DNA from: Adineta vaga
Lineage: Eukaryota > Animalia > Rotifera
Assembly (NCBI GenBank): GCA_021613535.1
Contig: CP075493.1
Coordinates: 620,001-684,000, forward strand
Length of the DNA stretch: 64,000 bases
Direction: 5' to 3'
Shown here: one piece after another, positions 47,383 to 64,000 of the stretch
Layout of the letters: the number at the start of each line of letters is the position of its first letter
Numbering within the stretch: the first letter of the stretch is position 1
Translations under genes and position numbers: made by a program
The notes under the pieces: model-generated
Told to the model about the DNA's origin: nothing
The model's input: the letters and a program-made list of their open reading frames with translations, nothing else
Database searches by the model: none

Positions 47383-50300
47383 TTATGAATAATGAGGCAA
47401 AATGTTTTCCGGTCGGTCGCAATTGGCTATACAACCATTATCTAAAACAAGTATGCGATCACTTCGAGCTACTGTATTAAGCCGATGAGCAATTGTTAAA
47501 ATAGTTCGATTTTGAAATTTTTCAGAGATCACTTTTTGGAGTATTCTTTCTGTGTGTGAGTCAACATTGGCAGTCGCCTCGTCGATCAACAATATTTTGC
47601 TTTCTTTAAGTATGGCTCGAGCAACACAGATCAATTGACATTGGCCAGCACTTAAATTGCTACCAGATTCCGCGACCGGTAATAAAAGACCATCATTATG
47701 TGCTAATACCATCGTTTTAAGTTGAACCGCTTCGAGTGCCATCCAACATTGTTCATCAGAAGAACGATTAAACGGGTCGAGATTATATCGAAGAGTACCA
47801 TTGAATAACACCGGTTGTTGAGGAATCACGCTAAGATGCGAACGAAGATGGTTGAGTGTGATACGACTAATGTCAATATCATCAATTAGAATAAATCCAT
47901 CAACAGTAGAACGGTCGACAAGACGGAAAATACCTTGAACTAGAGATGACTTTCCAGCACCTAAAAACAATAATGTATATAGATCAGGAAGAAGATATTT
48001 AAGAAGTCCATTTCTATCTTGTTTCAGCTCTCGACACAATCCATTTTCATCATAAAAAAATCGAGATAAGTCAATGAAATCAAGAAATATAAGCATTCAG
48101 AGAGAGCGAATTTATAATTGCTTTTTGTTTCCATTCAGAAGTTATGTACTTTAATCAGAGTAGAATATAAATGAGTCGATACGTAGTATGTTGTACAATT
48201 GGTTTGTGAATAGACAAACGAAAAGCGATCATTAACCACCAACTCTGAACATTCACATTCCTAAGGATGAATTTTATGTACAAAAAGATCTGCCACCAGT
48301 AAACTTGTCAGTTAATCGATTAGAAAATATTCAAATAAAATATGATTGCACAATCTATTCGAAAATGTACAACCAATGACAGATCTCAACACTTATCCAT
48401 CAAAACTTATCGATGAAATAATTAGTACACTACTTCAAAAGTTAAATGAGTTAAAGTCACACGTGAAATTATCCAAAACATAAAGCACCAAAACTTTGAG
48501 AATCGGTTCATTGAAAAACTAAGTTATGACTATGCTAATACGCTTAGAAAATGTTAGTCAATACTTTTTTCAACTTATCGAAGCTTTTGCAACAAAAAAA
48601 GGAACTAGCATCCATGCATCGTAAATTATTTCTTTGCATTGCGTTTCATTGTTTTTCAGATTAAAACTGAAATTATATCATGGAAATAGTTCTCATACAT
48701 ATTTGATCTACGATACATTTTTCCAAAAAAAAAGAACTTCGAAATTTTTTATCAATTCTTTTCTCCAAACATAATTTTTGTCATTAAAACAACCACACGT
48801 CCATGCACATGTAAGCTCTCATATGTATAGAGCGATGTGGATAAGTAGTATCACGGATTGTATGTGACAGAACGAGAAAAAGATGCTCGTTGTGGATCTC
48901 GAACCCACACCTTCTGCTATCCGGGCAGATTTCCTATGCCAGTTGGACTAGAAGAGACATCTAATTCTCTTACAGCGTCACTATGCAATATCTCTAACGC
49001 TAACAGCACATCAATAAAAAGCAGGGCTGCCATTCCTTATTTTTCGAATGGGGTACATTCCTTTTTAGATTTTTCTGTACGTCGAGCACTTTTGATTAAT
49101 TAAGATTCACTTTGTACGAATGAAAAAAAATCATTACATTTCATATGACAATTCAATCTTATTTGTAATTCAGCGGCAACCGTTTCAACTGACATTGAAT
49201 TTAGAATAGGTATTCATACATGCTTTGTACGCGTGAATACGCCTTGTATACAAGGGGAATTGGAACTTTCAGCGCAACAGTGTTCAGCACATGGAATTAT
49301 CAGTACACTGAATCTACAACGTGAAGAAGAATGAACGTGACGGCGTGGGTAAGAGTGTGGGTGGACATGCTTGTGGGTGAGGGCATGTAGTTGTAGATGT
49401 TTGAGGATATGTGTGAGGATATGGCTGTGGTTGTGGTGAGAATGAGACTGAGTGTAGTTGTGCGAGTGAATCGATTTGGGCGAGGGTGAGCGATAAATAA
49501 ACTAATCAATTTTACATCTACACTCGCAGGGACTTCCACATCCATACCTGATGTTGATTTTTCTTCGTGTTCAACATAGCTTATTTTCATTAGAAAAGTA
49601 GAGTATCGCATCGCAGACTTAAAAGCCAAAATGGGATGCAAAATTTTATGAGGTACAAAACGGGGAAATGGGGTATTGTACCCCAAAATGGCGTACAGTC
49701 GACAGCCCTGATATAAAGTGCACGATATTCCTGTGTAGAATCGATGGAATAGAATTAAAAATTTCGATCGAACACATAATCCGAGCATTCATAACAATTT
49801 CAATCAATTTAAAAAATAGAAGAGGCTTTTAGAACTTATTTAGATCACAAGAAGTTCTGTCAAAGGCTTCACATTGCAGAAATTTTTAGCAAAAACACAC
49901 GTAAAATTTGGAAATAACATGCTGAATAGTGTTTAGGATAAACAGAAGTAAAATCAAACATTGTTCGAAGTCTAAAAAACATACCTGTACGTCCTATTAT
50001 GCCGATTTTCTCTTCAGGCAAAACACACAGGTTGATACTTTTAAGTGCAGCTTCAAGCCCAGGCCTATAGCATAGCGAATAGTTTTGAAATTCGACTTTC
50101 CCATAATTTGGCCAATCGCTTGGTGTTTTTACCAATCTCTGTGAACCACCATTATCTTCTTCAGGTTCTAGTTTCACATACTCATCAATACGTTCGATAC
50201 TGGTCATTAAATGTTCTGCATCCATTAATTGCCGTATGCTTGCGTGAAATGATTGTGAAATATTGACACTATAGGTTAGTCCAAGTGCGGCTGCAGCTGG

Positions 50301-53192
50301 TTCAATATGCTGTCTTAATATAAGTAAAATTACAGCATTGAACGATGAGAACAGCATCACTAGAAGATCCAGATGAAAGCAAAACCAGTAGGTCGCACCC
50401 ATCATCGCCAACTGTGCACGGGTATTTGTATCTATTTTATTTGAAAACGCTTCCATAAAATCGTTTTCAGTTTTGAATGCACGAATGGTAATCAAGCCAT
50501 TTAAAGTTGACGCAAACTGCGTATAAATAGGGCTCCGTGAAGTATTTTCCAATCGTTTAAGCTGATAACTCGGTCGTTTGTAGTAACGGCAGATCATCCA
50601 GAATAATGGTGCTAATGGAATGAATGTAATTAAAACCCATGGATTTACAATACTCATAACGACTACTGAACCTATTGCCATCAATATCAACTGAATAGCA
50701 TCGAATAATGTTGCAGGTAACAGTTCGTCTACCACATGTTGATCAGCACTTGCACGATTGAGTATGCGACCACGTGGAGTACTATCGAAAAAGCGCATCG
50801 ATGTATACAATACTGCACGCAACATATTATTATGCAGTCTATCTGATCCCTTCAAGATAAGATAGAAAAAAAATTTAGCACGTACTAAAGCCATAAGCAC
50901 TGTAGCAAATATCAGAACAGTATAGACCATTGATCTCTGCTTTTGTGAATCGGTACCTAATGGATTTGACCATAGACGAAGCCAATAATTGGTGCTATCA
51001 TAAAGTATTTCACCAGTTATGAGAAGAAAAATAAGTAGACCAAATCTGAAATGACGTAACGGTGGTACAATGAAGAGAGAGCTGCATAGAGACCATTTTG
51101 TGCCACCTTCTAAGGATGCTTCGTCAGTAATAATTGACTTTTTATCAACACTTGACTGTTTTATTTCGAGCATGCTTGCTCTAATTGGCTCATTCTCCTT
51201 GTTGTCTTGATCTAATTGGTTGATCTTCTTAAATTCATCAGGCACTTCATCAAAATGGCCTTGCATTAGAATACGACCATGTTTAAGGAGAATCGCATGG
51301 TGTGCTTCGGCCAGAAACTCCGTTTGATGTGTGACTATGAGTCGAGTTTTCTTTCCCAAAAGCCCATGAGGACCGATGCATCGATCATAGATTTGTGTGG
51401 CCACTGTTCGATCAACAGAAGAAAATGGATCGTCAAGAAGATAAGTATCCACATTAACATATAATGCACGAGCTAGTGATACACGTGCTTTTTGTCCCCC
51501 ACTTAAGTTGACACCATTTTCGCCGAGCATTGTCAAATCGCCACTGGGTCCAAAAGCAGCGAGATCAAAGTCAAGACAACATGCATGTAGCACGCTATTA
51601 TACCGCTCTATATCATATGGCTTTCCTAGGAGAATATTCTCGCGAAGAGTGTCAGCAAATATCCATGGAGATTGAGCGGCATAAGAAAAAGTACTATTGT
51701 TCAAATGTAATTCACCATTGGTGAGATTCATCTCACCGAGAATAGCTGCAAGTAATGATGATTTACCAGAACCGACTTGTCCTATGATACCAACTAACAT
51801 ACCAGGTTTTATCTCGATATTTAATGATGATAAGCAGTCAACAGAATTATCCCATGAGAACGATGCATTACTCATTGTGATTGCACCATGTTTTTGTTCA
51901 ATTTGAGGCATCAGTACTATTTGCTGCTTTATTGTCGGCAAACGCATGAACCCATCGATTCTTTTTGTTGCTGTTAGCATTTCGCTTAATTTTTCGATAG
52001 CCTGGGGAAAATAACGCGCGACAGACATTCGCATTTGACCATAGAACGCAAGTGCCGTAAAAATATCAACAGTTTTAAGTTCATAACCGGACAGCCAGGC
52101 GCCGACAAATGCAGTTAATGAAATTAGGGGTACTGAAGCAAAGAATATGGCCATATTGAGTGCACGCAAGTAAGATGATTTTTGAATGCTACAAAATTCT
52201 TCCTTTCGCAAACGAAGTACATAATCTTCCATTGGTTTCTCCCAGTTATACATTTTGATGATCCAACATCCGCTAACAATTTCATTAAAGGCATGCACAC
52301 GTTTATCGACACATGCCGCTGTGGTAGCACTATACCGATTAAATTGGCGACTAAAGAGCATTTGTGTAGGGATTAATATGAAAAATATTGTATAGGAGAG
52401 CAATGCTGGCACAATTCCAATTATCCACAAAAGACAAACAAATACAAGAAAAGCCTCAAGTGGTGTTTGCCATAAATAATTAACACGTCCAACAAAACCC
52501 TCAAGTTTAGTTACATCATGAGCAATAAAATTAATTATTTGCGCTGAACTTGTTTTCTGAAGTGATGATGTATAGATTGATAATATGCGTGAGTACATTA
52601 TTGACATGAGTGCATTGCGAACTCTTAAACTGATTCTATTGGAACGAAATAAAAATTGATAATTGCTAGATGCTTCTATAAAGGTACATAAAAATAGTAC
52701 AACAACATATAAATAAACAACGGTAGTTGATATGGTTGTCACCGATGAAGACGTTTGACTGTCATGGATAAAGTTAATAATTTGACGAACAATCAATACT
52801 TTTAGGATTCGAACTATTGTTCGAGGCAACAGTGGAAGTCCAGATAATACAATTGGCTTCCAAAAAGTGCGAACAATAATGTTCCAAGTCGTAGCTGTTG
52901 CCCAATCATGTGCTAGCATTTCATTTAATAATGTTGAACTTTTGTCCGGATGAGATAAACCGTCGAGATCATCATCCATTAATGGTCGCTTAAAACTCAA
53001 CGAAAGTAAGGGACGCATCCAGCACCAACATATTAAAGACCACCATCGAGTCCATGATGCCTCTACCCATTCAAGACGGGATGATTGTCGTTGACGAAGA
53101 TTCAAATCATCATATGAATTTTGCTTGTTTTTGATTAGCAATTCTTTTTCATCGTTAGTTAAGCCAAAGCTATCTCTAGAAAATAATGCCAT
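47383..53192 (-). CDS. ABCC4/MRP4-like ABC transporter; exons 53192..49985 and 47960..47383 (about 1261 aa)
   Basis: TMD1; NBD1 (GQVGSGKSS, NLSGGQKAR, LLDDP); TMD2; NBD2 with Walker A GRTG|AGKSS split by a 2-kb phase-1 intron (G|GTATGT ... TTTTTAG|GT), NLSAGQ and IDEATANVD. Confidence 0.92.
48884..48958 (-). repeat. tRNA-like sequence (SINE head or tRNA pseudogene) in the ABCC intron
   Basis: TAGTCCAACTGGC A-box-like motif, stem-loop TCTGC-CCGGATA-GCAGA and GGTTCGAGATCC B box. The acceptor stem pairs poorly. Confidence 0.55.
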
Positions 53193-53935
53193 ATGATTAT
53201 ATTTTTGTTGGAACGTCGTCACTTTTTTGACAATTATTAATAAAAATATTAGCAATATTTCAATAATGAGTTAATATCTAAAATTATAATGTTAAAGCTA
53301 TTGATTCAAAAAAATCACTCTTCTGGAAGAAAAAATATCACTTATGAAAAGATTCTGTAAATCTGAGACTCAATTTCTTTCTAAAATAAATGCGGAAACT
53401 TCGGATTTTATCCGAGAGTTATGTGTACTGCAAAAAGTGTATGGGAGAGATGAACCATTCTAGAATGTCATCACATTAAAATTACCGCGAGAAATTTTTC
53501 GATGAGCAAGATTTTTCATGTTGAGTTATGAATGAATTTTTGTATTGGAATCTATCGGAATAACGGTCATATGCAACCTCATGAATCCATAAAAGATCTA
53601 TGACAGATACACATATCAGCATTTTCGTAATAGATCATCAATATCAATAGATTTGGAGATCAGGTTTTTCCATTTTGATAGCCCTTCTGACTAGCTACAA
53701 AACCAAGCATTTGGAAAAACCCCAAACTACAGATCATATGAAACGTATTTATGCAATTCGGTGTTAAAATACAGTTTTTGCACATTTTGAGACCTTTTTT
53801 AAGCATTTTTTCCTTAGTGAACTATGATTTGACTGAAAACCAATATCAGATTCGGAGTCAGCGTTAAAAACTGAGTCGATTCATATATGTTTTAAATAAT
53901 TTTGAGAGCAAATGTTTTTTCAAAACAACCCTGTA

Positions 53936-57785: not shown

Positions 57786-58862
57786 TCACTTGGTAAGCGA
57801 TAGTTCCTGTTGTTCGAGTGTTTTGAGTGATGGTATAGTAATTGTCACTTTTGATTTTCGCGGATGTTTGAAACGAATGTAACCTATCAGGAAAATGATC
57901 AGTATAACTAATACTCCTATTAATATAATGTTGAAAGTGATTGTCGAATGGATTTTAAATTGTCCCCAAAAAGGATCTCAGGAGCTTGTGTAATGTTACT
58001 CATCAGGTCAATTATATTTTGAATGTGTGACGGAATGTACGGTAATTTCTCCCATTTAGTATTGTTGTTAATTAAGGAGTGCAAATCAATAACTTCTCCA
58101 GCTACAGGATTAATTGTATAGTTCTGATAGAGAACAAGTTTTGAATTGGATTGGACTGAAAGCCCCGACAAGTAAAATAAGTCACATGACAAACCCATCG
58201 AATCTTTGGTAGTAATTAAGGCAATTGGAGGTAGGGTGAACGCATGGTTGTCCATTGCCTTATAGTGGTCGAAATCTGGGTGGGTAGCTGTGTGACATTT
58301 TGTAGTCGAGTTTGTGGAGATCGCCCAATAATGCTCAATTTTACGTACAAATACTGACTCCAGATAAGGTTCAATGCGGCATGATCTTAATGATGTATCT
58401 GCTAAAACTTCATAAATGCACGTGTCTTCAAGGTCTTTTCGGATAGCTGGCGTTATGCGGCATGATGTCATCACTTCAAAACAACAAGGTTCCGCCTCCT
58501 CTCCGGACCATCGAACAAACTCATGAGAATCCGGACGAATTCCTATGAAAGCTGGCATTTGAGCAAGTCTAACACATCTATGTCCATGTTTGAACGGAAT
58601 TGGTATCGGGTCATATACAAAAAATGGTTTTTCGTCATAGTTTGAAGCTGCAACGTGCGAGGTAAACACTAACTCTCCGATGATTGCCCCATATGTCGAA
58701 GCTCTTAATTGGATGGTAGGGACAAAAGAAATCTCTTGACGAACGAGTAGCCGAGTTGCTAAATCAACCATTGATATCGAGCTATTTTTATCTTCGAATG
58801 AGATATTTGTAGCTTTTATGACATATTCAATAGCTTTCGGTATATCGTCGTGATGAATAAAA
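57786..58862 (-). pseudogene. C-terminal part of an env-like (class I/F-type) viral fusion glycoprotein, 5'-truncated, one frameshift
   Basis: Cys-rich ectodomain (VYDPIPIPF...CCFEVMTSC...TCIYEVL...SC...KC...SCD) with several N-glycosylation sequons. A 1-nt shift in the T/G run at about 57964-57972 restores WGQFKIHSTITFNIILIGVLVILIIFLIGYIRFKHPRKSK...LTK* (TM plus basic tail; stop at 57786-57788). Confidence 0.65.
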
Positions 58863-59408
58863 CAACTTGTGTATGAAGAAGATTCTTTTTCAACAGACAG
58901 TATCTCAGAAATATTCCCCAGCAATACACGATAAATCCGTAAACCATTGTACGCCATGATTGAAATCGTTCGGTCGAAGATTGAATGCAATTTCGAACAA
59001 CTTCAATCAAATCTCATCCCGATACCATTGATGGAACAAACATTTCGTATTGATATCGCCGATATGCTACCAAAAGATAAGAAACCAAGATCAAATTTGA
59101 AAACAATTCTATCGATTAAGCGACGTGCATTACCACTTGTGCCTGCATTTGCTATCACGATACATAAAAGGCAAGGTCAAACTTTGAGTAATGTTGTCAT
59201 TGATTTAAAACTACCAAGCAAAACTGATGATATTGCCGCAATTTATGTACCATTGTCACGTATGAAACGTCTGGCTGACTTAATCATTTTAAGACATTTC
59301 GATTACAAAACTTTATTGATGAAGCCAGCAAAATCGCAACTTGCGGAGTCGGAAAGATTAGATAAACTATATACAGAAACACAACTACGCTTTGCTCAAT
59401 GCTTCTGA
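58860..59408 (+). pseudogene. C-terminus of Helitron/Helentron PIF1-family helicase, 5'-truncated
   Basis: Motifs LPLVPAFAITIHKRQGQTL and IYVPLSR. The frame extends upstream through a nonsense codon to KQLVYEEDSFSTDSISEIFPSNTR*IRKPLYAMIE at about 58860. Confidence 0.85.
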
Positions 59409-60572: not shown

Positions 60573-61211
60573 GGGAAAATTTGATTTCCCACTACACCAA
60601 TCGATGGTTCTTAGATTTAGGTACATTTCTTCTAGCAAGTGTTTTCTGAAACTCCGAACTTTCTCTAGCGCCGACATCTTTTTTTCTGATCATCCAGAAA
60701 ATCCCATGTATTTTTGCTTGTGCGATCGAATAAGGAGAGAAGAATAGCTGGTGCGATGAATTAATGGCAAGTGACTAAATCGCATCACACACTTTTTTCG
60801 ATTAAAACCGAAAACCAAGTACGAAGACATCGTGCGATCTAAATGAAACACACACCAGTCGATAGAGCTCGAGGAGATGAATCCAATGGTCTAGGTTCCA
60901 ACGAGAAATAAGTAATTTTAATGCGTTGAAATGCAGGTTTTTACAGAATTTTATATTTTTTTGCTGGAAATGATGTAATTGGGGAAGAAAAATAGATGGT
61001 AAAATGTAATTGGGAAGAGCATGGAACGCGAGAAAAATCGAAGTAGGTCCGATTGTAACGGCCCGTGTTCAGTCAAATCTCAAGCTAATTTGATGAAAAA
61101 CATGTAGTTCGATAGAGAAATGTTTGTTCTACTCCGCTTTTCAAAAATCAGCTCAAACGGATGTTGGAGAGCGGAGATATTGGAGTTTTATTGAGAGATT
61201 TTAAGAATCTC

Positions 61212-61446
61212 GAGGGTGTGGGTGGATGTGGGTGTAGGTGGATGTGGGTGTGGGTGTAGATATGAGTGAAGAAGATATACACACACCCACACCCTCACCC
61301 TCACCCACACCCACACCCTCACCCACACCCTCACCCACACCCACACCCACACCCTCACCCTCACCCACACCCACACCCTCACCCACACCCTCACCCACAC
61401 CCACACCCACACCCTCACCCTCACCCACACCCACACCCACACCCTC
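61212..61446. repeat. Interstitial telomere-type array: G-rich arm followed by an expanded (CCCACA/CCCTCA)n arm
   Basis: GAGGGTGTGGGTGGATGTGGG... then about 27 hexamers mixing CACCCA and CACCCT with 60-bp higher-order periodicity. TGTGGG and TGAGGG are reported bdelloid telomeric repeats. Confidence 0.85.
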
Positions 61447-61864
61447 ATTTCTTCCATTCGTCCAGTGAACGCGCTATGCAGCGTTGCTTTCCTATATTTT
61501 TATCTCTAATGTGTGAAAACGCCGTTTTCGCCGTTATCTATCTGCGTGGATGGTCACTTTATTTTACGTTGCACGCATCGCTTGCGTTCTCCACTGGGTG
61601 ATGTTATATATGCAGCGAAGAACGCAAGAAATGCGACACAAGGTGCTCGTTGCGATACTTGTGCGCATTTTATTTCAGTGTATAATTTTTTCTATATGAT
61701 ATCATCATTTTAATCATGTAAGATGTTTAGAAGTGTTGTAGATTTTCTCTAGATAGAAACAAATCTATATAAATAGTACGTATCAAGCTTCAGCTGTTGA
61801 CGAATACCGTCCTGTTTGACGATTGAAACGTATTTCGAGAGTCGTTTATATACTATTTTAAAAA

Positions 61865-63931
61865 ATGATCAAAAACGAGGGCGTCAACGAAGTTCAGTTA
61901 CATGAATTGACACGATGGAAAAACTCCGATTTTCAAACCGACGTAGAGGACAATTATGTCTCCGATGAGAAGATTGTGATTATTTGTGGCTGTGGTCGAA
62001 GTGGAACGACACTATTGCGGGTTATGTTGGATACTCATTCTCGTATAGCATGTGGTCCCGAATCACAATTGTTTTTACCATTAAAAATAGAATTAAATGA
62101 ATTGTCGAAGAAGTTTAATATTGAATTAGAAATACTTGAAAGAATGCTCAATACGTCTAACAGTAAAGTGAAATTTATTGAAATTTTCATTAAACTTTAC
62201 TTACAAAAAACAAACAAAACGATTTGGGCCGACAAAACATCAAGAAACATTCATCGGCTAGCATATATTTTGAAACATTTTCCCAATGCTAAAATAATAC
62301 ATGTGATACGGAACGGTAGAGATGTAGTAGCATCTTTGAAAACGCATAGAAAACGAATGATTTCTGATGGGAAACTAATCCCTACTGGATTTATTATGCC
62401 TTTGCAAGACTGTATCGATCGATGGTTACTATCTATTCGCGATGGTCTACCTTTTCGAAATAATGCAAATTACATGGAGGTTCAATACGAAGCGCTTGTA
62501 TTCAATACAAATCAAACATTAAAGAATATTTGTCAATTTATTGGTGTTGAATTTGAACAAACGATGATGAACTACTATGCCATTGACGATCATTCAAGAA
62601 ATCCATTTAATTTTCCGCAAAATACTGAAGCCACAAGACCTATATCATCAGAATCGATTGGTCGATGGAAGCGAGATTTAAACGAAACTGAACTAGAACA
62701 GGTCATGTTACAGATAGATCCAGTTATAGAAAAAATTGGTTATCTACCAACTAACAATAGTTTCGACGTCGATAGGAAACCATATTTGGCTATTCCAGTT
62801 ATTGATGCTCCCATTGTAGAAAAAATCATCGAAAATGACATGAATTTTATAAAAGAACATGTGTTAAAAGCTTTTACGATACTCAAGACAGATGAATCTC
62901 ATATGACACAACCTGCAAAACATTATCTACAAAGAAGATCTGCAACAAGTGGATGTGATCGAATTATTGCAATGCCATATTATCTTGAAGGACAAAATGG
63001 TATAGCAGGAATAAAATGGATAGGAAGCAACGAAAATAATTCTTCGATTGGAATAAATCGAGCTAATTCTATTCTTATATTGAACAATATAAAAACTAAC
63101 GCTCCAATATGTATTATGGATGATGGAGTAATTAGTTCAATGAGAACATTTGCCATTTCAATCATAGCAATCGAAATGTTCGTACCTTTACCAAAAAAGA
63201 TTGCATGTATTGGCATTGGAAAATTAGGTCGAATGCATGCAGTAATGTTATCTAAATATTTTCCAACGATTGAAAAAACGTTCTGCTTCTCTAACAAGAG
63301 CAATTTTGATGATATTGTTAGTGAAAAAATTATTAAATGTAATAGTTGGTTGGAAGCTATACAACAAGCAGAAGTTATTGTGACAACTACTACAGCAAAT
63401 GAACCATATATTAAAGCTGATGATATTCACGGTGATAAATTATTAATCAATCTATCATTGATGGATTTTGATTTGAGTGTTTTTCAAAAATCATCCGTAA
63501 TTATTGTGGACAACTGGTTTCAATGTACTCAAGCAAAGAAAGTTTTCAAACAAGGAGTTGATAGTGGAATTATTCAACGACATCATGTTATCGAATTTGG
63601 AGATTTAATTGTAGAAAAAAATACAAAGAATAAATATCCTAAAAATGGAATTATTATGGTTAACGCTTTGGGGATGGCAATTGAAGATATTATTGTCGCT
63701 CAGGCTGTCTACAATAAATTAATGTTTATGTCTACAATAAAGCCTAATTACTTTTATATGGACAATCGACAGAATCCTTTGACTGATCCAGCAGTAAGTG
63801 ACACAATAAATACATATAATCCCTATAATAAGTTAATTGAAAAACTTGAAAACGATAAAAATTTATTACAACAACATGTTCAAATGCTTAAACAAGAGAT
63901 CGAGACTCTGAAAAAGTCTTCTCTGCCATGA
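61865..63931 (+). CDS. Fusion protein: PAPS-dependent sulfotransferase + SbnB-like (ornithine cyclodeaminase/mu-crystallin family) dehydrogenase + C-terminal coiled coil; intronless
   Basis: Sulfotransferase 5'-PSB GCGRSGTTLL, WADKT and 3'-PB IRNGRDVVAS. SbnB-like QPAKHYL, DRIIAMP, GIKWIGS, RANSILILN, ISSMRT, Rossmann IGIGKLG, VDNWFQC and GMAIEDI. TATATAAA at 61766-61773. Confidence 0.88.
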   Translation: MIKNEGVNEVQLHELTRWKNSDFQTDVEDNYVSDEKIVIICGCGRSGTTLLRVMLDTHSRIACGPESQLFLPLKIELNELSKKFNIELEILERMLNTSNSKVKFIEIFIKLYLQKTNKTIWADKTSRNIHRLAYILKHFPNAKIIHVIRNGRDVVASLKTHRKRMISDGKLIPTGFIMPLQDCIDRWLLSIRDGLPFRNNANYMEVQYEALVFNTNQTLKNICQFIGVEFEQTMMNYYAIDDHSRNPFNFPQNTEATRPISSESIGRWKRDLNETELEQVMLQIDPVIEKIGYLPTNNSFDVDRKPYLAIPVIDAPIVEKIIENDMNFIKEHVLKAFTILKTDESHMTQPAKHYLQRRSATSGCDRIIAMPYYLEGQNGIAGIKWIGSNENNSSIGINRANSILILNNIKTNAPICIMDDGVISSMRTFAISIIAIEMFVPLPKKIACIGIGKLGRMHAVMLSKYFPTIEKTFCFSNKSNFDDIVSEKIIKCNSWLEAIQQAEVIVTTTTANEPYIKADDIHGDKLLINLSLMDFDLSVFQKSSVIIVDNWFQCTQAKKVFKQGVDSGIIQRHHVIEFGDLIVEKNTKNKYPKNGIIMVNALGMAIEDIIVAQAVYNKLMFMSTIKPNYFYMDNRQNPLTDPAVSDTINTYNPYNKLIEKLENDKNLLQQHVQMLKQEIETLKKSSLP

Positions 63932-64000
63932 TCACAATTTTGATACTGACTTTGATAAATGAACTTCAACTTTTCTCTAAATTCCATATCTCGCTTCTAA

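What the first reader, a model, noticed from the sequence alone, without database searches (positions are those of the whole stretch)
61865..63931. Sulfotransferase fused to an SbnB-type diaminopropionate-forming enzyme in an animal genome: candidate N-sulfo-Dap (monobactam-like) chemistry
Seen: one uninterrupted 688-aa ORF with intact PAPS-binding motifs, followed by a domain with motifs I recognise from S. aureus SbnB specifically (DRIIAMP, GIKWIGS, ISSMRT, VDxWxQC, GMAIEDI) rather than generic mu-crystallin. It has a TATA box and host-like AT content. Established: SbnA/SbnB make L-2,3-diaminopropionate (Dap); in the sulfazecin monobactam pathway SbnA/B homologues and a sulfotransferase produce N-sulfonated Dap for beta-lactam closure; bdelloids carry horizontally acquired NRPS genes. 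Inference: this fusion could be part of an undescribed animal pathway for a sulfonated Dap-containing defence metabolite or siderophore. I do not know this architecture from the literature. No SbnA or NRPS partner is present in this window.
Basis: partly seen in the sequence, partly recalled or inferred. Interest (0 to 1): 0.85.

Follow-up and report, generated by a model that had tools for sequence, protein, structure and literature searches.

The report
Bacterial sulfotransferase–SbnB-like fusion gene in rotifer
An animal genome (bdelloid-rotifer-like) carries an intact, apparently transcribed gene taken whole from bacteria; it joins a sulfate-transferring enzyme to a close cousin of the SbnB enzyme, and it belongs to a rare uncharacterised bacterial family where the sulfotransferase has replaced SbnB's usual partner SbnA, so its product is unknown and probably not the proposed sulfonated diaminopropionate.

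Summary
Window 61865-63931 (+) is one 688-aa ORF with a PAPS-type sulfotransferase (ST) domain and an SbnB-like OCD-family domain.

The SbnB likeness is genuine. In trees the domain falls in a clade (A) that is sister to siderophore-type, SbnA-paired SbnBs (support 98/94). A second SbnA-paired SbnB clade lies outside both.

The architecture is not an animal invention. About 25 prokaryotic proteins have the same fusion. In candidate-phyla bacteria the two enzymes are adjacent genes, usually beside a TauE permease.

In clade A the ST takes SbnA's place:
- 19 of 28 clade-A loci have a fused or adjacent ST, and none has SbnA.
- 62 of 73 siderophore-type loci have SbnA, and none has an ST.

The host genome has no SbnA (its best hits are cystathionine beta-synthase exons), no TauE and none of the bacterial cluster partners.

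The gene is single-copy, AT-rich like the host and intronless. Both domains are under purifying selection (dN/dS about 0.15). RNA-like contigs from three studies begin at 61739/40.

Verdict: a horizontally acquired member of an uncharacterised ST + SbnB-derived enzyme module. The substrate is unknown. The scan had noted this same stretch once before, in an overlapping window.

The parts
61740..61864 (+). Inferred 5' untranslated region; RNA-like contigs begin at 61739/61740
   Evidence: Contigs of runs X9, X8 and X16 (three studies) all start at 61739/40. None covers 61001-61738, whereas DNA run X1 spans 61453-64000. The RNA nature of these runs is a guess made by the tool.
61766..61775 (+).
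   Evidence: Sequence read, compared with the contig starts.
61865..63931 (+). Complete 688-aa ORF including the stop codon: sulfotransferase + SbnB-like fusion, no intron
   Evidence: No splice joints in the laid contigs. The host's annotated model P0002 is truncated and starts at M204.
61865..62764 (+). N-terminal PAPS-type sulfotransferase domain (aa 1-300), including a family-conserved N-terminal segment (E14, W18, D22)
   Evidence: Pfam PF13469/PF00685. Best solved relatives are TPST1/2 at 69 bits, then the CurM/OLS sulfotransferases. Invariant columns.
61988..62011 (+). 5'-phosphosulfate-binding loop GCGRSGTT (aa 42-49)
   Evidence: Invariant or nearly invariant in 23 sequences; aligned with TPST GVPRSGTT.
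62309..62335 (+). 3'-phosphate-binding stretch RNGRDVVAS (aa 149-157)
   Evidence: R149, D153 and S157 are invariant; aligned with TPST RDGRASVHS.
62798..63718 (+). SbnB-like OCD-family dehydrogenase domain (aa 312-618)
   Evidence: TIGR03944 221.7 bits; 4M54 154.9 bits; trees; 39 residues invariant in both clade A and siderophore-type SbnBs.
63212..63229 (+). Rossmann dinucleotide-binding motif GIGKLG (aa 450-455)
   Evidence: G450, G452 and G455 are invariant in clades A, B and S.
63290..63292 (+). Ser476 at the end of Rossmann strand beta-2, where SbnA-paired SbnBs have Asp
   Evidence: Fixed difference S476->D against both clade B and clade S. S. aureus SbnB has Asp at this position.
63782..63928 (+). 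C-terminal extension of about 50 aa that looks coiled-coil-like, absent from all prokaryotic relatives and shared only with the 76%-identical copy P0001
   Evidence: Alignment A1, columns 701-764.

Best explanation
The gene is a horizontally acquired, intact and apparently transcribed member of a rare, uncharacterised prokaryotic two-enzyme module. In this module an enzyme descended from SbnB (an NAD(P)-dependent dehydrogenase acting on the C-N bond of an N-carboxyalkyl or alpha-amino acid) works with a PAPS-dependent, TPST-like sulfotransferase in place of the PLP enzyme SbnA. The fusion was already made in prokaryotes and was taken up whole.

Shown: domain identities, conserved catalytic motifs, phylogenetic position, the partner swap, absence of SbnA, single copy, host-like composition and purifying selection on both domains.

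Inferred: the two domains act in sequence on one small amino-acid-type metabolite. One step is redox chemistry at a C-N bond, of the same kind as SbnB but on a different substrate and possibly with NADP(H). The other step is O- or N-sulfonation. The result would be a sulfated or sulfamated amino-acid derivative. Bacteria export it (TauE/TSUP permease, ABC, AI-2E or MatE neighbours) or hand it to amide ligases (GH3/CapK-like, ATP-grasp, or A-T NRPS-like neighbours). In the rotifer, which has PAPS like any animal (established knowledge; not checked in G000) but none of the bacterial partners, the fusion would act alone on a host metabolite.
For: Identity.

Pre-existing fusion or gene pair in prokaryotes: about 25 fusions at 40-49% identity; L012, L016, L018: fusion + 542-575-aa unknown + GT4 + flippase + CapK-like; L019: separate adjacent ST and OCD genes; TauE-ST-OCD cassettes in candidate-phyla bacteria, one inside a ribosomal-protein operon.

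Phylogeny: careful tree with clade A 100/100, clade S (Ralstonia staphyloferrin-type, B. cereus) 99/94 and A+S 98/94.

Partner swap: clade A n=28, with ST fused 10, ST adjacent 9, SbnA 0, TauE 7. Clade S n=73, with SbnA 62, ST 0, TauE 0. Control loci L112-L114 have sbnA immediately upstream. A PALP-OCD fusion cluster exists with the same layout. The partnered ST domains form one clade (aLRT 100).

Catalytic competence: 39 residues are invariant in both A and S, and all are present in the window protein.

Different substrate or cofactor: S476 in place of Asp, plus S-invariant H, D, K, N, R, H, R and E residues that are not kept in clade A.

Host integration and constraint: single copy at 0.68 Mb of an 18.1-Mb contig. 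The stretch occurs in runs of 9 studies. RNA-like contigs start at 61739/40 with no joints. dN/dS is 0.147 (ST part 0.16, SbnB-like part plus tail 0.14) and GC3 is 25-29% in three eukaryote-like copies. A Rotaria protein fragment is 86% identical.

Ligase and exporter neighbours.
Against: No substrate or product is known for any family member, so the mechanism is inference only. The ST's nearest ST-only relatives sit in polysaccharide-type loci, and the proteobacterial fusions sit next to a glycosyltransferase and a flippase, so the acceptor could be a glycan rather than a small molecule. A few clade-A members (L111, L118, L122) have no ST nearby, so the pairing is not obligate. The Ser476/NADP inference is weak because the basic residue that follows is not conserved in the rotifer copies. 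The RNA-like runs are not certified as RNA, and none bridges 62072-62283. The candidate-phyla genome G003 shows no APS kinase, so its PAPS supply is unexplained.
Confidence: 0.6

Rival explanations
1. One reading: the fusion makes or uses L-2,3-diaminopropionate by SbnB chemistry and N-sulfonates it, feeding a monobactam-like or siderophore-like metabolite.
For: The domain is truly SbnB-type, sister to staphyloferrin-type SbnBs. It shares 39 invariant residues with them. S. aureus SbnB even scores higher with the clade-A profile (276.8 bits) than with the clade-B profile (242.3 bits). Some ST-less clade-A members lie beside NRPS-like A-T(-TE) or ATP-grasp enzymes.
Against: No SbnA in the host, none in 28 clade-A loci and none over the cutoff in carrier genomes G001-G003; G003 has no such PLP enzyme at all. 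The SbnB equivalog cutoff is not reached. Polar residues invariant in SbnA-paired SbnBs are not kept. There is no NRPS in the window. The rotifer HGT-biosynthesis paper does not mention such a gene.
Confidence: 0.1
2. Leaving-group model: the sulfotransferase replaces SbnA's use of O-phosphoserine by making an O-sulfated hydroxy-amino acid such as O-sulfoserine. The SbnB-derived domain then uses bound NAD(P)+ in a redox-neutral cycle (oxidise, eliminate sulfate, add an amine, reduce) to give Dap or another beta-substituted amino acid without PLP.
For: The ST occupies SbnA's exact slot, either the upstream gene or the N-terminal domain. Precedents for an activating partner and for sulfate as a leaving group: the DabA kinase ahead of SbnA/B-like enzymes (PMC10906522), and CurM-type sulfotransferases among the solved relatives. 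OCD itself runs a redox-neutral NAD+ cycle (established knowledge). A TauE-type sulfur-oxyanion permease is adjacent in candidate-phyla cassettes. Amide-ligase neighbours suggest an amino-acid building block.
Against: Purely mechanistic speculation with no biochemical data. No enzyme of this family is known to catalyse beta-replacement. ST-less clade-A members exist. The ST's closest solved relatives are tyrosine sulfotransferases, not amino-acid-hydroxyl sulfotransferases.
Confidence: 0.1
3. Glycan-modification model: the module decorates a polysaccharide or glycoconjugate with a sulfated and/or amino-acid substituent. In the rotifer it would modify a host glycan.
For: The proteobacterial fusions lie in a conserved cluster with a GT4 glycosyltransferase, a Polysacc_synt flippase and two GH3/CapK-like ligases. 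The nearest ST-only relatives lie beside Wzy_C, flippase, AMP-binding and other ST genes.
Against: The candidate-phyla cassettes and the lone fusions (L098-L101) have no glycan genes. None of the cluster partners was found in the host with the queries used. An SbnB-type amino-acid dehydrogenase has no known role on sugars.
Confidence: 0.15
4. Contaminant DNA or a decaying, non-functional relic.
For: Short-read DNA contigs do not bridge from the gene across the upstream microsatellite to host genes. The host annotation calls only a truncated 485-aa model. The expression evidence comes from low-depth contigs of uncertain library type.
Against: The gene lies 0.68 Mb into an 18.1-Mb contig. It is present in runs of 9 studies from 2013 to 2025. 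GC3 is 25%. It has a C-terminal extension found only in the eukaryote-like copies. Related copies occur in a Rotaria assembly and on eukaryote-like contigs. dN/dS is 0.15 in both domains, with all invariant residues kept.
Confidence: 0.03

Closest known systems
[quoted passage not shown]
   Same: Same OCD-family fold and subgroup. It is the best solved hit (154.9 bits; 276.8 with the clade-A profile). The motifs DRIIAMP, GIKWIGS, SSMRT, VDDW.Q and GMA.ED are shared, and 39 residues are invariant in both groups. The two are sister clades.
   Different: No SbnA partner anywhere. The score is below the equivalog cutoff. Ser replaces the NAD-binding Asp. About ten polar residues invariant in SbnA-paired SbnBs are not kept. 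It is fused to or paired with a sulfotransferase.
SbnA-SbnB (PALP-OCD) fusion proteins of Pseudomonadota
   Same: Two-domain layout of about 640 aa with the SbnB-type domain at the C-terminus and its partner enzyme at the N-terminus.
   Different: The N-terminal partner here is a PAPS sulfotransferase, not the PLP-dependent SbnA.
Sulfazecin pathway (sulG/sulH Dap synthesis plus a sulfotransferase and NRPS)
   Same: It combines SbnB-type chemistry with a sulfotransferase in one pathway (PMC10906522 for sulG/sulH; the sulfotransferase step is from my own knowledge).
   Different: That pathway has SbnA (SulH), separate genes and NRPSs. None of these accompanies the fusion family. Whether the sulfazecin sulfotransferase is related to this ST domain was not tested.
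Protein-tyrosine sulfotransferases TPST1/2, and the CurM/OLS polyketide sulfotransferases
   Same: They are the best solved relatives of the N-terminal domain (69 and 45 bits). The PAPS-binding loops and the aligned Glu (E66) and Lys (K124) positions are conserved. Their catalytic role in TPST is from my own knowledge.
   Different: Only about 25-30% similar. The acceptor is unknown. There is no membrane anchor or PKS context.
DabABC (threonine kinase + SbnA-like + SbnB-like) for 2,3-diaminobutyrate
   Same: A third enzyme activates a hydroxy-amino acid for an SbnB-type pathway (PMC10906522).
   Different: The activation is by phosphorylation and still needs the PLP enzyme. Here the partner is a sulfotransferase and no PLP enzyme is present.
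Horizontally acquired biosynthetic genes of bdelloid rotifers (Nowell et al. 2024, PMC11258130)
   Same: A bacterial-type metabolic gene that is intronless, adjusted to host composition and located near a chromosome end.
   Different: It is not an NRPS/PKS, and the gene family is not mentioned in that paper or its supplements. Regulation under pathogen challenge was not tested.

Membership tests
SbnB equivalog (NCBIfam TIGR03944; ACEGA dehydrogenase) | Whole-protein score at or above the curated cutoff of 326.9 bits | tested here: not met
   221.7 bits. Prokaryotic clade-A members score 211-251 bits.
SbnB equivalog (NCBIfam TIGR03944; ACEGA dehydrogenase) | A partner SbnA (PLP enzyme, TIGR03945) adjacent or elsewhere in the genome to supply ACEGA | tested here: not met
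   Host: no hit over the cutoff, and the best exons are cystathionine beta-synthase. 0 of 28 clade-A loci against 62 of 73 clade-S loci. None over the cutoff in G001-G003.
SbnB equivalog (NCBIfam TIGR03944; ACEGA dehydrogenase) | Phylogenetic placement within the radiation of SbnA-paired SbnBs | tested here: met
   ((A,S),B) with A+S at 98/94. The root rests on only two distant outgroups, and S. aureus SbnB itself could be placed only by profile scores.
SbnB equivalog (NCBIfam TIGR03944; ACEGA dehydrogenase) | Residues invariant in SbnA-paired SbnBs, including the NAD-binding Asp at the end of beta-2 | tested here: not met
   39 core residues are kept, but S476 replaces the Asp. S-invariant H/D/K/N/R/H/R/E positions (at window residues 362, 391, 545, 555, 556, 576, 589, 557, 595) are not kept.
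SbnB equivalog (NCBIfam TIGR03944; ACEGA dehydrogenase) | NAD+-dependent conversion of ACEGA to 2-oxoglutarate and L-Dap | not testable with these tools
   Needs an enzyme assay. Reaction as described in PMC9485241.
OCD/mu-crystallin superfamily (PF02423) | Pfam gathering score and the Rossmann GxGxxG motif | tested here: met
   92.8 bits against a cutoff of 24. G450, G452 and G455 are invariant.
PAPS-dependent sulfotransferases (PF13469/PF00685) | Pfam gathering scores, the 5'-PSB loop and the 3'-PB motif | tested here: met
   107.5 and 64.5 bits. GCGRSGTT and R149/D153/S157 are conserved and align with TPST.
Protein-tyrosine sulfotransferase (TPST) family | Tyrosine in a peptide as the acceptor | not testable with these tools
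   Only distant similarity (69 bits). Not filed as a TPST.
Sulfazecin-type monobactam pathway | Co-occurrence of SbnA, SbnB, NRPS modules with a Dap-specific A domain, and a sulfotransferase | tested here: not met
   SbnA is absent and there is no NRPS in the window. A genome-wide search for Dap-specific A domains was not done.
Horizontally acquired gene of a bdelloid-type animal genome | Nearest relatives prokaryotic; embedded in a host chromosome; host-like composition; conserved among related hosts | tested here: met
   Physical linkage rests on the assembly only.
Horizontally acquired gene of a bdelloid-type animal genome | Transcription in the host | tested here: inconclusive
   Contigs of three RNA-like runs start at 61739/40 and cover most of the ORF. 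However, the library type is a guess, depth is low and 62072-62283 is not bridged.

The most novel reading that the evidence does not exclude
The sulfotransferase + SbnB-derived module is a PLP-independent route to L-2,3-diaminopropionate or another beta-substituted amino acid. The sulfotransferase activates a hydroxy-amino acid as its O-sulfate, standing in for SbnA's O-phosphoserine. The SbnB-derived domain then uses bound NAD(P)+ in a redox-neutral oxidise, eliminate-sulfate, add-amine, reduce cycle. Bdelloid rotifers would have acquired this self-contained two-step pathway in a single gene.
Probability: 0.1. Interest if true: 0.85.

Novelty: new variant of a known kind. Interest (0 to 1): 0.55.

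Why it matters
SbnA/SbnB is the textbook route to diaminopropionate for siderophores and for antibiotics such as capreomycin, zwittermicin and the monobactams. This analysis shows a sister lineage of SbnB that has dropped SbnA and is instead locked to a sulfotransferase, as a fusion or as an adjacent gene. The two parts descend together from a single origin.

The module occurs in minimal-genome candidate-phyla bacteria, once inside a ribosomal-protein operon. It also occurs in Pseudomonadota and a cyanobacterial MAG, and, by horizontal transfer, in bdelloid-type rotifers. There both domains have stayed under purifying selection.

The chemistry is unknown and is likely to involve a new sulfated or otherwise unusual amino-acid metabolite. 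The single fused, intronless animal gene is a convenient construct for expression and assay.

For the scan, the result also corrects two points. The architecture is not an animal novelty. The monobactam/N-sulfo-Dap idea fails its own test because no SbnA exists in the genome.

Tried and rejected
1. Bacterial cluster partners in the host: the 575-aa unknown protein and the CapK-like protein gave no match with those single-protein queries, and TauE (PF01925) gave no match.
2. First reading of tree 1, "clade A lies outside true SbnB": rejected after S. aureus SbnB scored higher with the clade-A profile and after anchored Ralstonia and Bacillus sbnB genes joined clade A as its sister.
3. Intron at 62072-62283, the gap in RNA-like contigs: rejected. 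There are no GT..AG ends, the contig ends vary between runs, and the stretch encodes invariant residues.
4. TATA box at 61766-61775 as the promoter: it lies downstream of the observed contig starts.
5. L015 (the 60% copy) as a close relative of the host: its GBP neighbour is only 38% identical to host sequence, so the organism is unidentified, though the contig is AT-rich and gene-sparse.
6. Literature: no paper links a sulfotransferase to an OCD/SbnB fusion, and nothing appears in the rotifer HGT paper or 200 of its supplement files. The SbnB structure paper is not held, so ligand-contact residues could not be mapped.
7. A polyadenylation signal AATAAA is not present within 1.3 kb after the stop codon, so the 3' end is undefined.
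8. One Pfam call included a mis-framed ORF for L020 and gave no ST hit there; it was ignored.
9. The cystathionine beta-synthase candidates were searched exon by exon by reference.
That step was left out.
Full report
**Observation.** The window holds one uninterrupted ORF at 61865..63931 (+) of 688 aa. Pfam finds Sulfotransfer_3 (aa 38-231, E 1.5e-30), Sulfotransfer_1 (aa 38-280) and OCD_Mu_crystall (aa 331-619, E 2.6e-26). In NCBIfam the SbnB model TIGR03944 is far ahead of every other OCD-family model (221.7 against 79.5 bits or less), but it stays below its equivalog cutoff of 326.9. Among solved structures, S. aureus SbnB (4M54) is the best match to the C-terminal domain (154.9 bits). CmnK scores 76 and generic OCD, CRYM and AlaDH entries 60 or less. 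The N-terminal domain is closest to protein-tyrosine sulfotransferases (69 bits), then to the CurM/OLS sulfotransferases. Its PAPS-binding loops are conserved. Only the 'TATA box' is doubtful, because TATATAAATA at 61766-61775 lies inside the transcript-like contigs.

**Genome setting.** The window is C1:620001-684000 of a 100.8-Mb assembly in six contigs, and the gene is single-copy. ORF GC is 32.4% and GC3 25.4%, which is host-like. The host's deposited gene model (P0002, 485 aa) starts at Met204 and so misses most of the sulfotransferase domain. The stretch occurs in sequencing runs of nine studies of the same organism.

I laid four runs on 61001-64000. The DNA run has a contig over 61453-64000. 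Three small, RNA-like runs from three studies have contigs that all begin at 61739/61740, cover most of the ORF, show no splice joints and leave 61001-61738 empty. This is what a transcription start about 125 nt upstream of the ATG would give. The caveats are that the library type is a guess, depth is low and no contig bridges 62072-62283. That gap is AT-rich coding sequence without intron boundaries.

**The architecture is prokaryotic and older than the transfer.** A search with the whole protein finds about 25 proteins of 616-675 aa with the same two Pfam domains. The closest are P0001 (76%) and P0003 (60%). These lie on AT-rich, gene-sparse, eukaryote-like contigs, and a Rotaria protein fragment is 86% identical. 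The remaining proteins, at 40-49% identity, are on gene-dense prokaryotic contigs.

Among species-representative genomes, the full-length form is in a Geminicoccus MAG. The split form (two adjacent genes) is in a Synechococcaceae MAG and a Nomurabacteria-binned MAG. An exhaustive search of 1.84 billion representatives lists only four or five full-length fusion clusters, so the fused form is rare.

The window protein and P0001 alone carry a C-terminal tail of about 50 aa that looks coiled-coil-like.

**Neighbours.**
- In Pseudomonadota the fusion heads a conserved cluster: fusion, a 542-575-aa unknown protein (74% identical between two lineages), a GT4 glycosyltransferase, a flippase and a CapK-like enzyme. 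By language-model features the unknown protein resembles GH3/CapK/AMP-binding amide ligases.
- In candidate-phyla bacteria the unit is TauE permease + sulfotransferase + SbnB-like gene. In one genome it is inserted between ribosomal protein genes L5 and S14.
- Other fusions stand alone.
- A few clade-A genes have no sulfotransferase. They lie next to an NRPS-like A-T-TE protein, oxygenases and a MatE exporter (L122), an A-T didomain (L117) or an ATP-grasp enzyme (L111).
- No SbnA appears in any of these loci.

**Phylogeny of the SbnB-like domain.** A first tree split the family into clade A (all fusions, the sulfotransferase-adjacent genes and the rotifer sequences; aLRT 100) and clade B (proteins that their sources name SbnB). 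I first read this as 'clade A is outside SbnB'. That reading did not hold.

S. aureus SbnB carries clade-A residues at several discriminating positions. It also scores higher with a clade-A profile (276.8 bits) than with a clade-B profile (242.3 bits). I therefore fetched functionally anchored sbnB genes:
- a Ralstonia solanacearum megaplasmid, with sbnA, sbnB, two IucA/IucC genes, SbnG and TonB receptors;
- a B. cereus plasmid, with sbnA, sbnB and an NRPS;
- a B. wiedmannii plasmid.

With these added, a careful tree (LG+C20+F+G4; UFBoot/aLRT) gives clade A 100/100, the anchored siderophore-type clade S 99/94, A+S 98/94, and clade B outside both at 78/70. Clade B is also SbnA-paired, as the Pedobacter control shows. 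So clade A arose from within SbnA-partnered SbnBs.

The rotifer-like sequences form one group (99-100). It is sister to the sampled prokaryotic clade-A members rather than nested in any of them, so the donor is unresolved.

- Of 28 clade-A genes (some loci redundant), 10 are fused to the sulfotransferase and 9 have it adjacent. None has SbnA within 3 kb, and 7 have TauE. Most of the 9 without any partner are at contig ends.
- Of 73 clade-S genes, 62 have SbnA adjacent or fused. None has a sulfotransferase or TauE.

The sulfotransferase sits where SbnA sits in canonical operons: immediately upstream, or as the N-terminal domain. Bacterial PALP-OCD fusions of about 640 aa have the same layout. 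The partnered sulfotransferase domains form a single clade (aLRT 100; the 35 partnered rows plus P0028). This fits one origin of the pairing and co-inheritance of both parts.

**Test of the Dap reading.**
- In the host genome, the SbnA model finds nothing over its cutoff. The two best places are exons that score 131-135 bits for cystathionine beta-synthase against 65-75 for SbnA.
- Carrier genomes G001 and G002 have only CysK-level hits. The 0.6-Mb genome G003 has no hit at all.
- The known reaction needs ACEGA made by SbnA (PMC9485241; PMC10906522).
- Thirty-nine residues are invariant in both clade A and clade S, and all are present in the window protein. The catalytic scaffold is therefore intact.
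- There are fixed differences, including Ser476 where all SbnA-paired SbnBs have the Asp typical of NAD binding. About ten polar residues that are invariant in clade S are not kept in clade A.

I infer the same class of C-N redox chemistry on a different substrate, possibly with NADP(H). The cofactor inference is weak, because the basic residue that follows Ser476 is not conserved in the rotifer copies.

**Selection.** Between the window gene and P0001, dS is about 0.98 and dN/dS is 0.147. It is 0.16 in the sulfotransferase part and 0.14 in the SbnB-like part plus tail. Both domains are therefore kept by selection in the eukaryote-like lineage, whatever the truncated annotation suggests.

**What it most likely does.**
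- Shown: it is a bacterial two-enzyme module acquired whole. It is intact, constrained and probably transcribed.
- Inferred: the two activities act in sequence on one amino-acid-type metabolite, combining SbnB-like C-N redox with PAPS-dependent sulfonation. In bacteria the product is exported or passed to amide ligases.

Three rivals remain open. The second is a leaving-group model, in which the sulfotransferase replaces SbnA's phosphoserine activation and the SbnB-derived domain runs a redox-neutral beta-replacement; this is attractive but speculative. The third is a glycan-decoration role, suggested by the proteobacterial clusters and by the contexts of the sulfotransferase-only relatives. 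Contamination or decay is unlikely.

**Known or new.** Horizontal acquisition of bacterial metabolic genes by bdelloid rotifers is well known (PMC11258130). That paper and its supplements do not mention this family. No paper in the library links a sulfotransferase with an OCD/SbnB enzyme. The enzyme family itself, an SbnB sister clade coupled to a sulfotransferase instead of SbnA, appears undescribed. I rate it a new variant of a known kind.

**Other notes.** The scan's notes contain the same reading of this same stretch from an overlapping window, which is not independent support.

Noticed in passing
window 61188-61601: A long hexanucleotide-type microsatellite that reads as (His-Pro)n, (Thr-Pro-Ser-Pro)n or (Trp-Val-Arg-Val)n in different frames. 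Short-read contigs break here (repeats skipped at 61272-61452).
   Followed up: partly
window 47383-53255 (-): Large ABC transporter. One 1128-aa ORF has two ABC_membrane stretches and an ABC_tran domain, and a further ABC_tran ORF lies at 47383-48096. This looks like a full-length eukaryote-type transporter 8.6 kb upstream of the fusion. ABC exporters also flank the ST/SbnB-like pair in L019 and sbnAB in Pedobacter (L112), but no link was tested.
   Followed up: no
window 57920-58990 (-): A 356-aa ORF with a weak Baculo_F (envelope fusion protein) hit (E 9e-4). An earlier scan note (s1-494670) calls this region an env-like gene next to a Helentron helicase.
   Followed up: no
L104 5106-7798 (metagenomic candidate-phyla contig): The three-gene cassette (sulfotransferase, SbnB-like gene, TauE) is inserted inside the ribosomal-protein operon between the L5 and S14 genes, which is an unusual insertion site.
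   Followed up: partly
L122 400-10528 (metagenome contig JACCDN010373031.1, GC 34%): A clade-A SbnB-like gene without a sulfotransferase sits in a small cluster: TauD-like dioxygenase, Asp/Asn beta-hydroxylase, fatty-acid-desaturase-like protein, MatE exporter and an NRPS-like A-T-TE protein. This is a candidate pathway for an unusual amino-acid building block.
   Followed up: partly
window 62474 (Met204 of the ORF): The deposited host gene model (P0002, 485 aa) begins at this internal Met and omits most of the sulfotransferase domain. Conservation and dN/dS argue that the full 688-aa ORF is the real product.
   Followed up: yes
L012 11899-13626; L016 12511-14139; L018 11848-13509: A conserved 542-575-aa protein with no Pfam family (74% identical between two lineages) is translationally coupled to the proteobacterial fusions. 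By language-model features it resembles GH3/CapK/AMP-binding amide ligases.
   Followed up: partly
P0028 (638 aa, metagenome): Its sulfotransferase domain falls inside the SbnB-partnered ST clade, but it is fused to a different domain (PF21360) instead of the SbnB-like domain.
   Followed up: no
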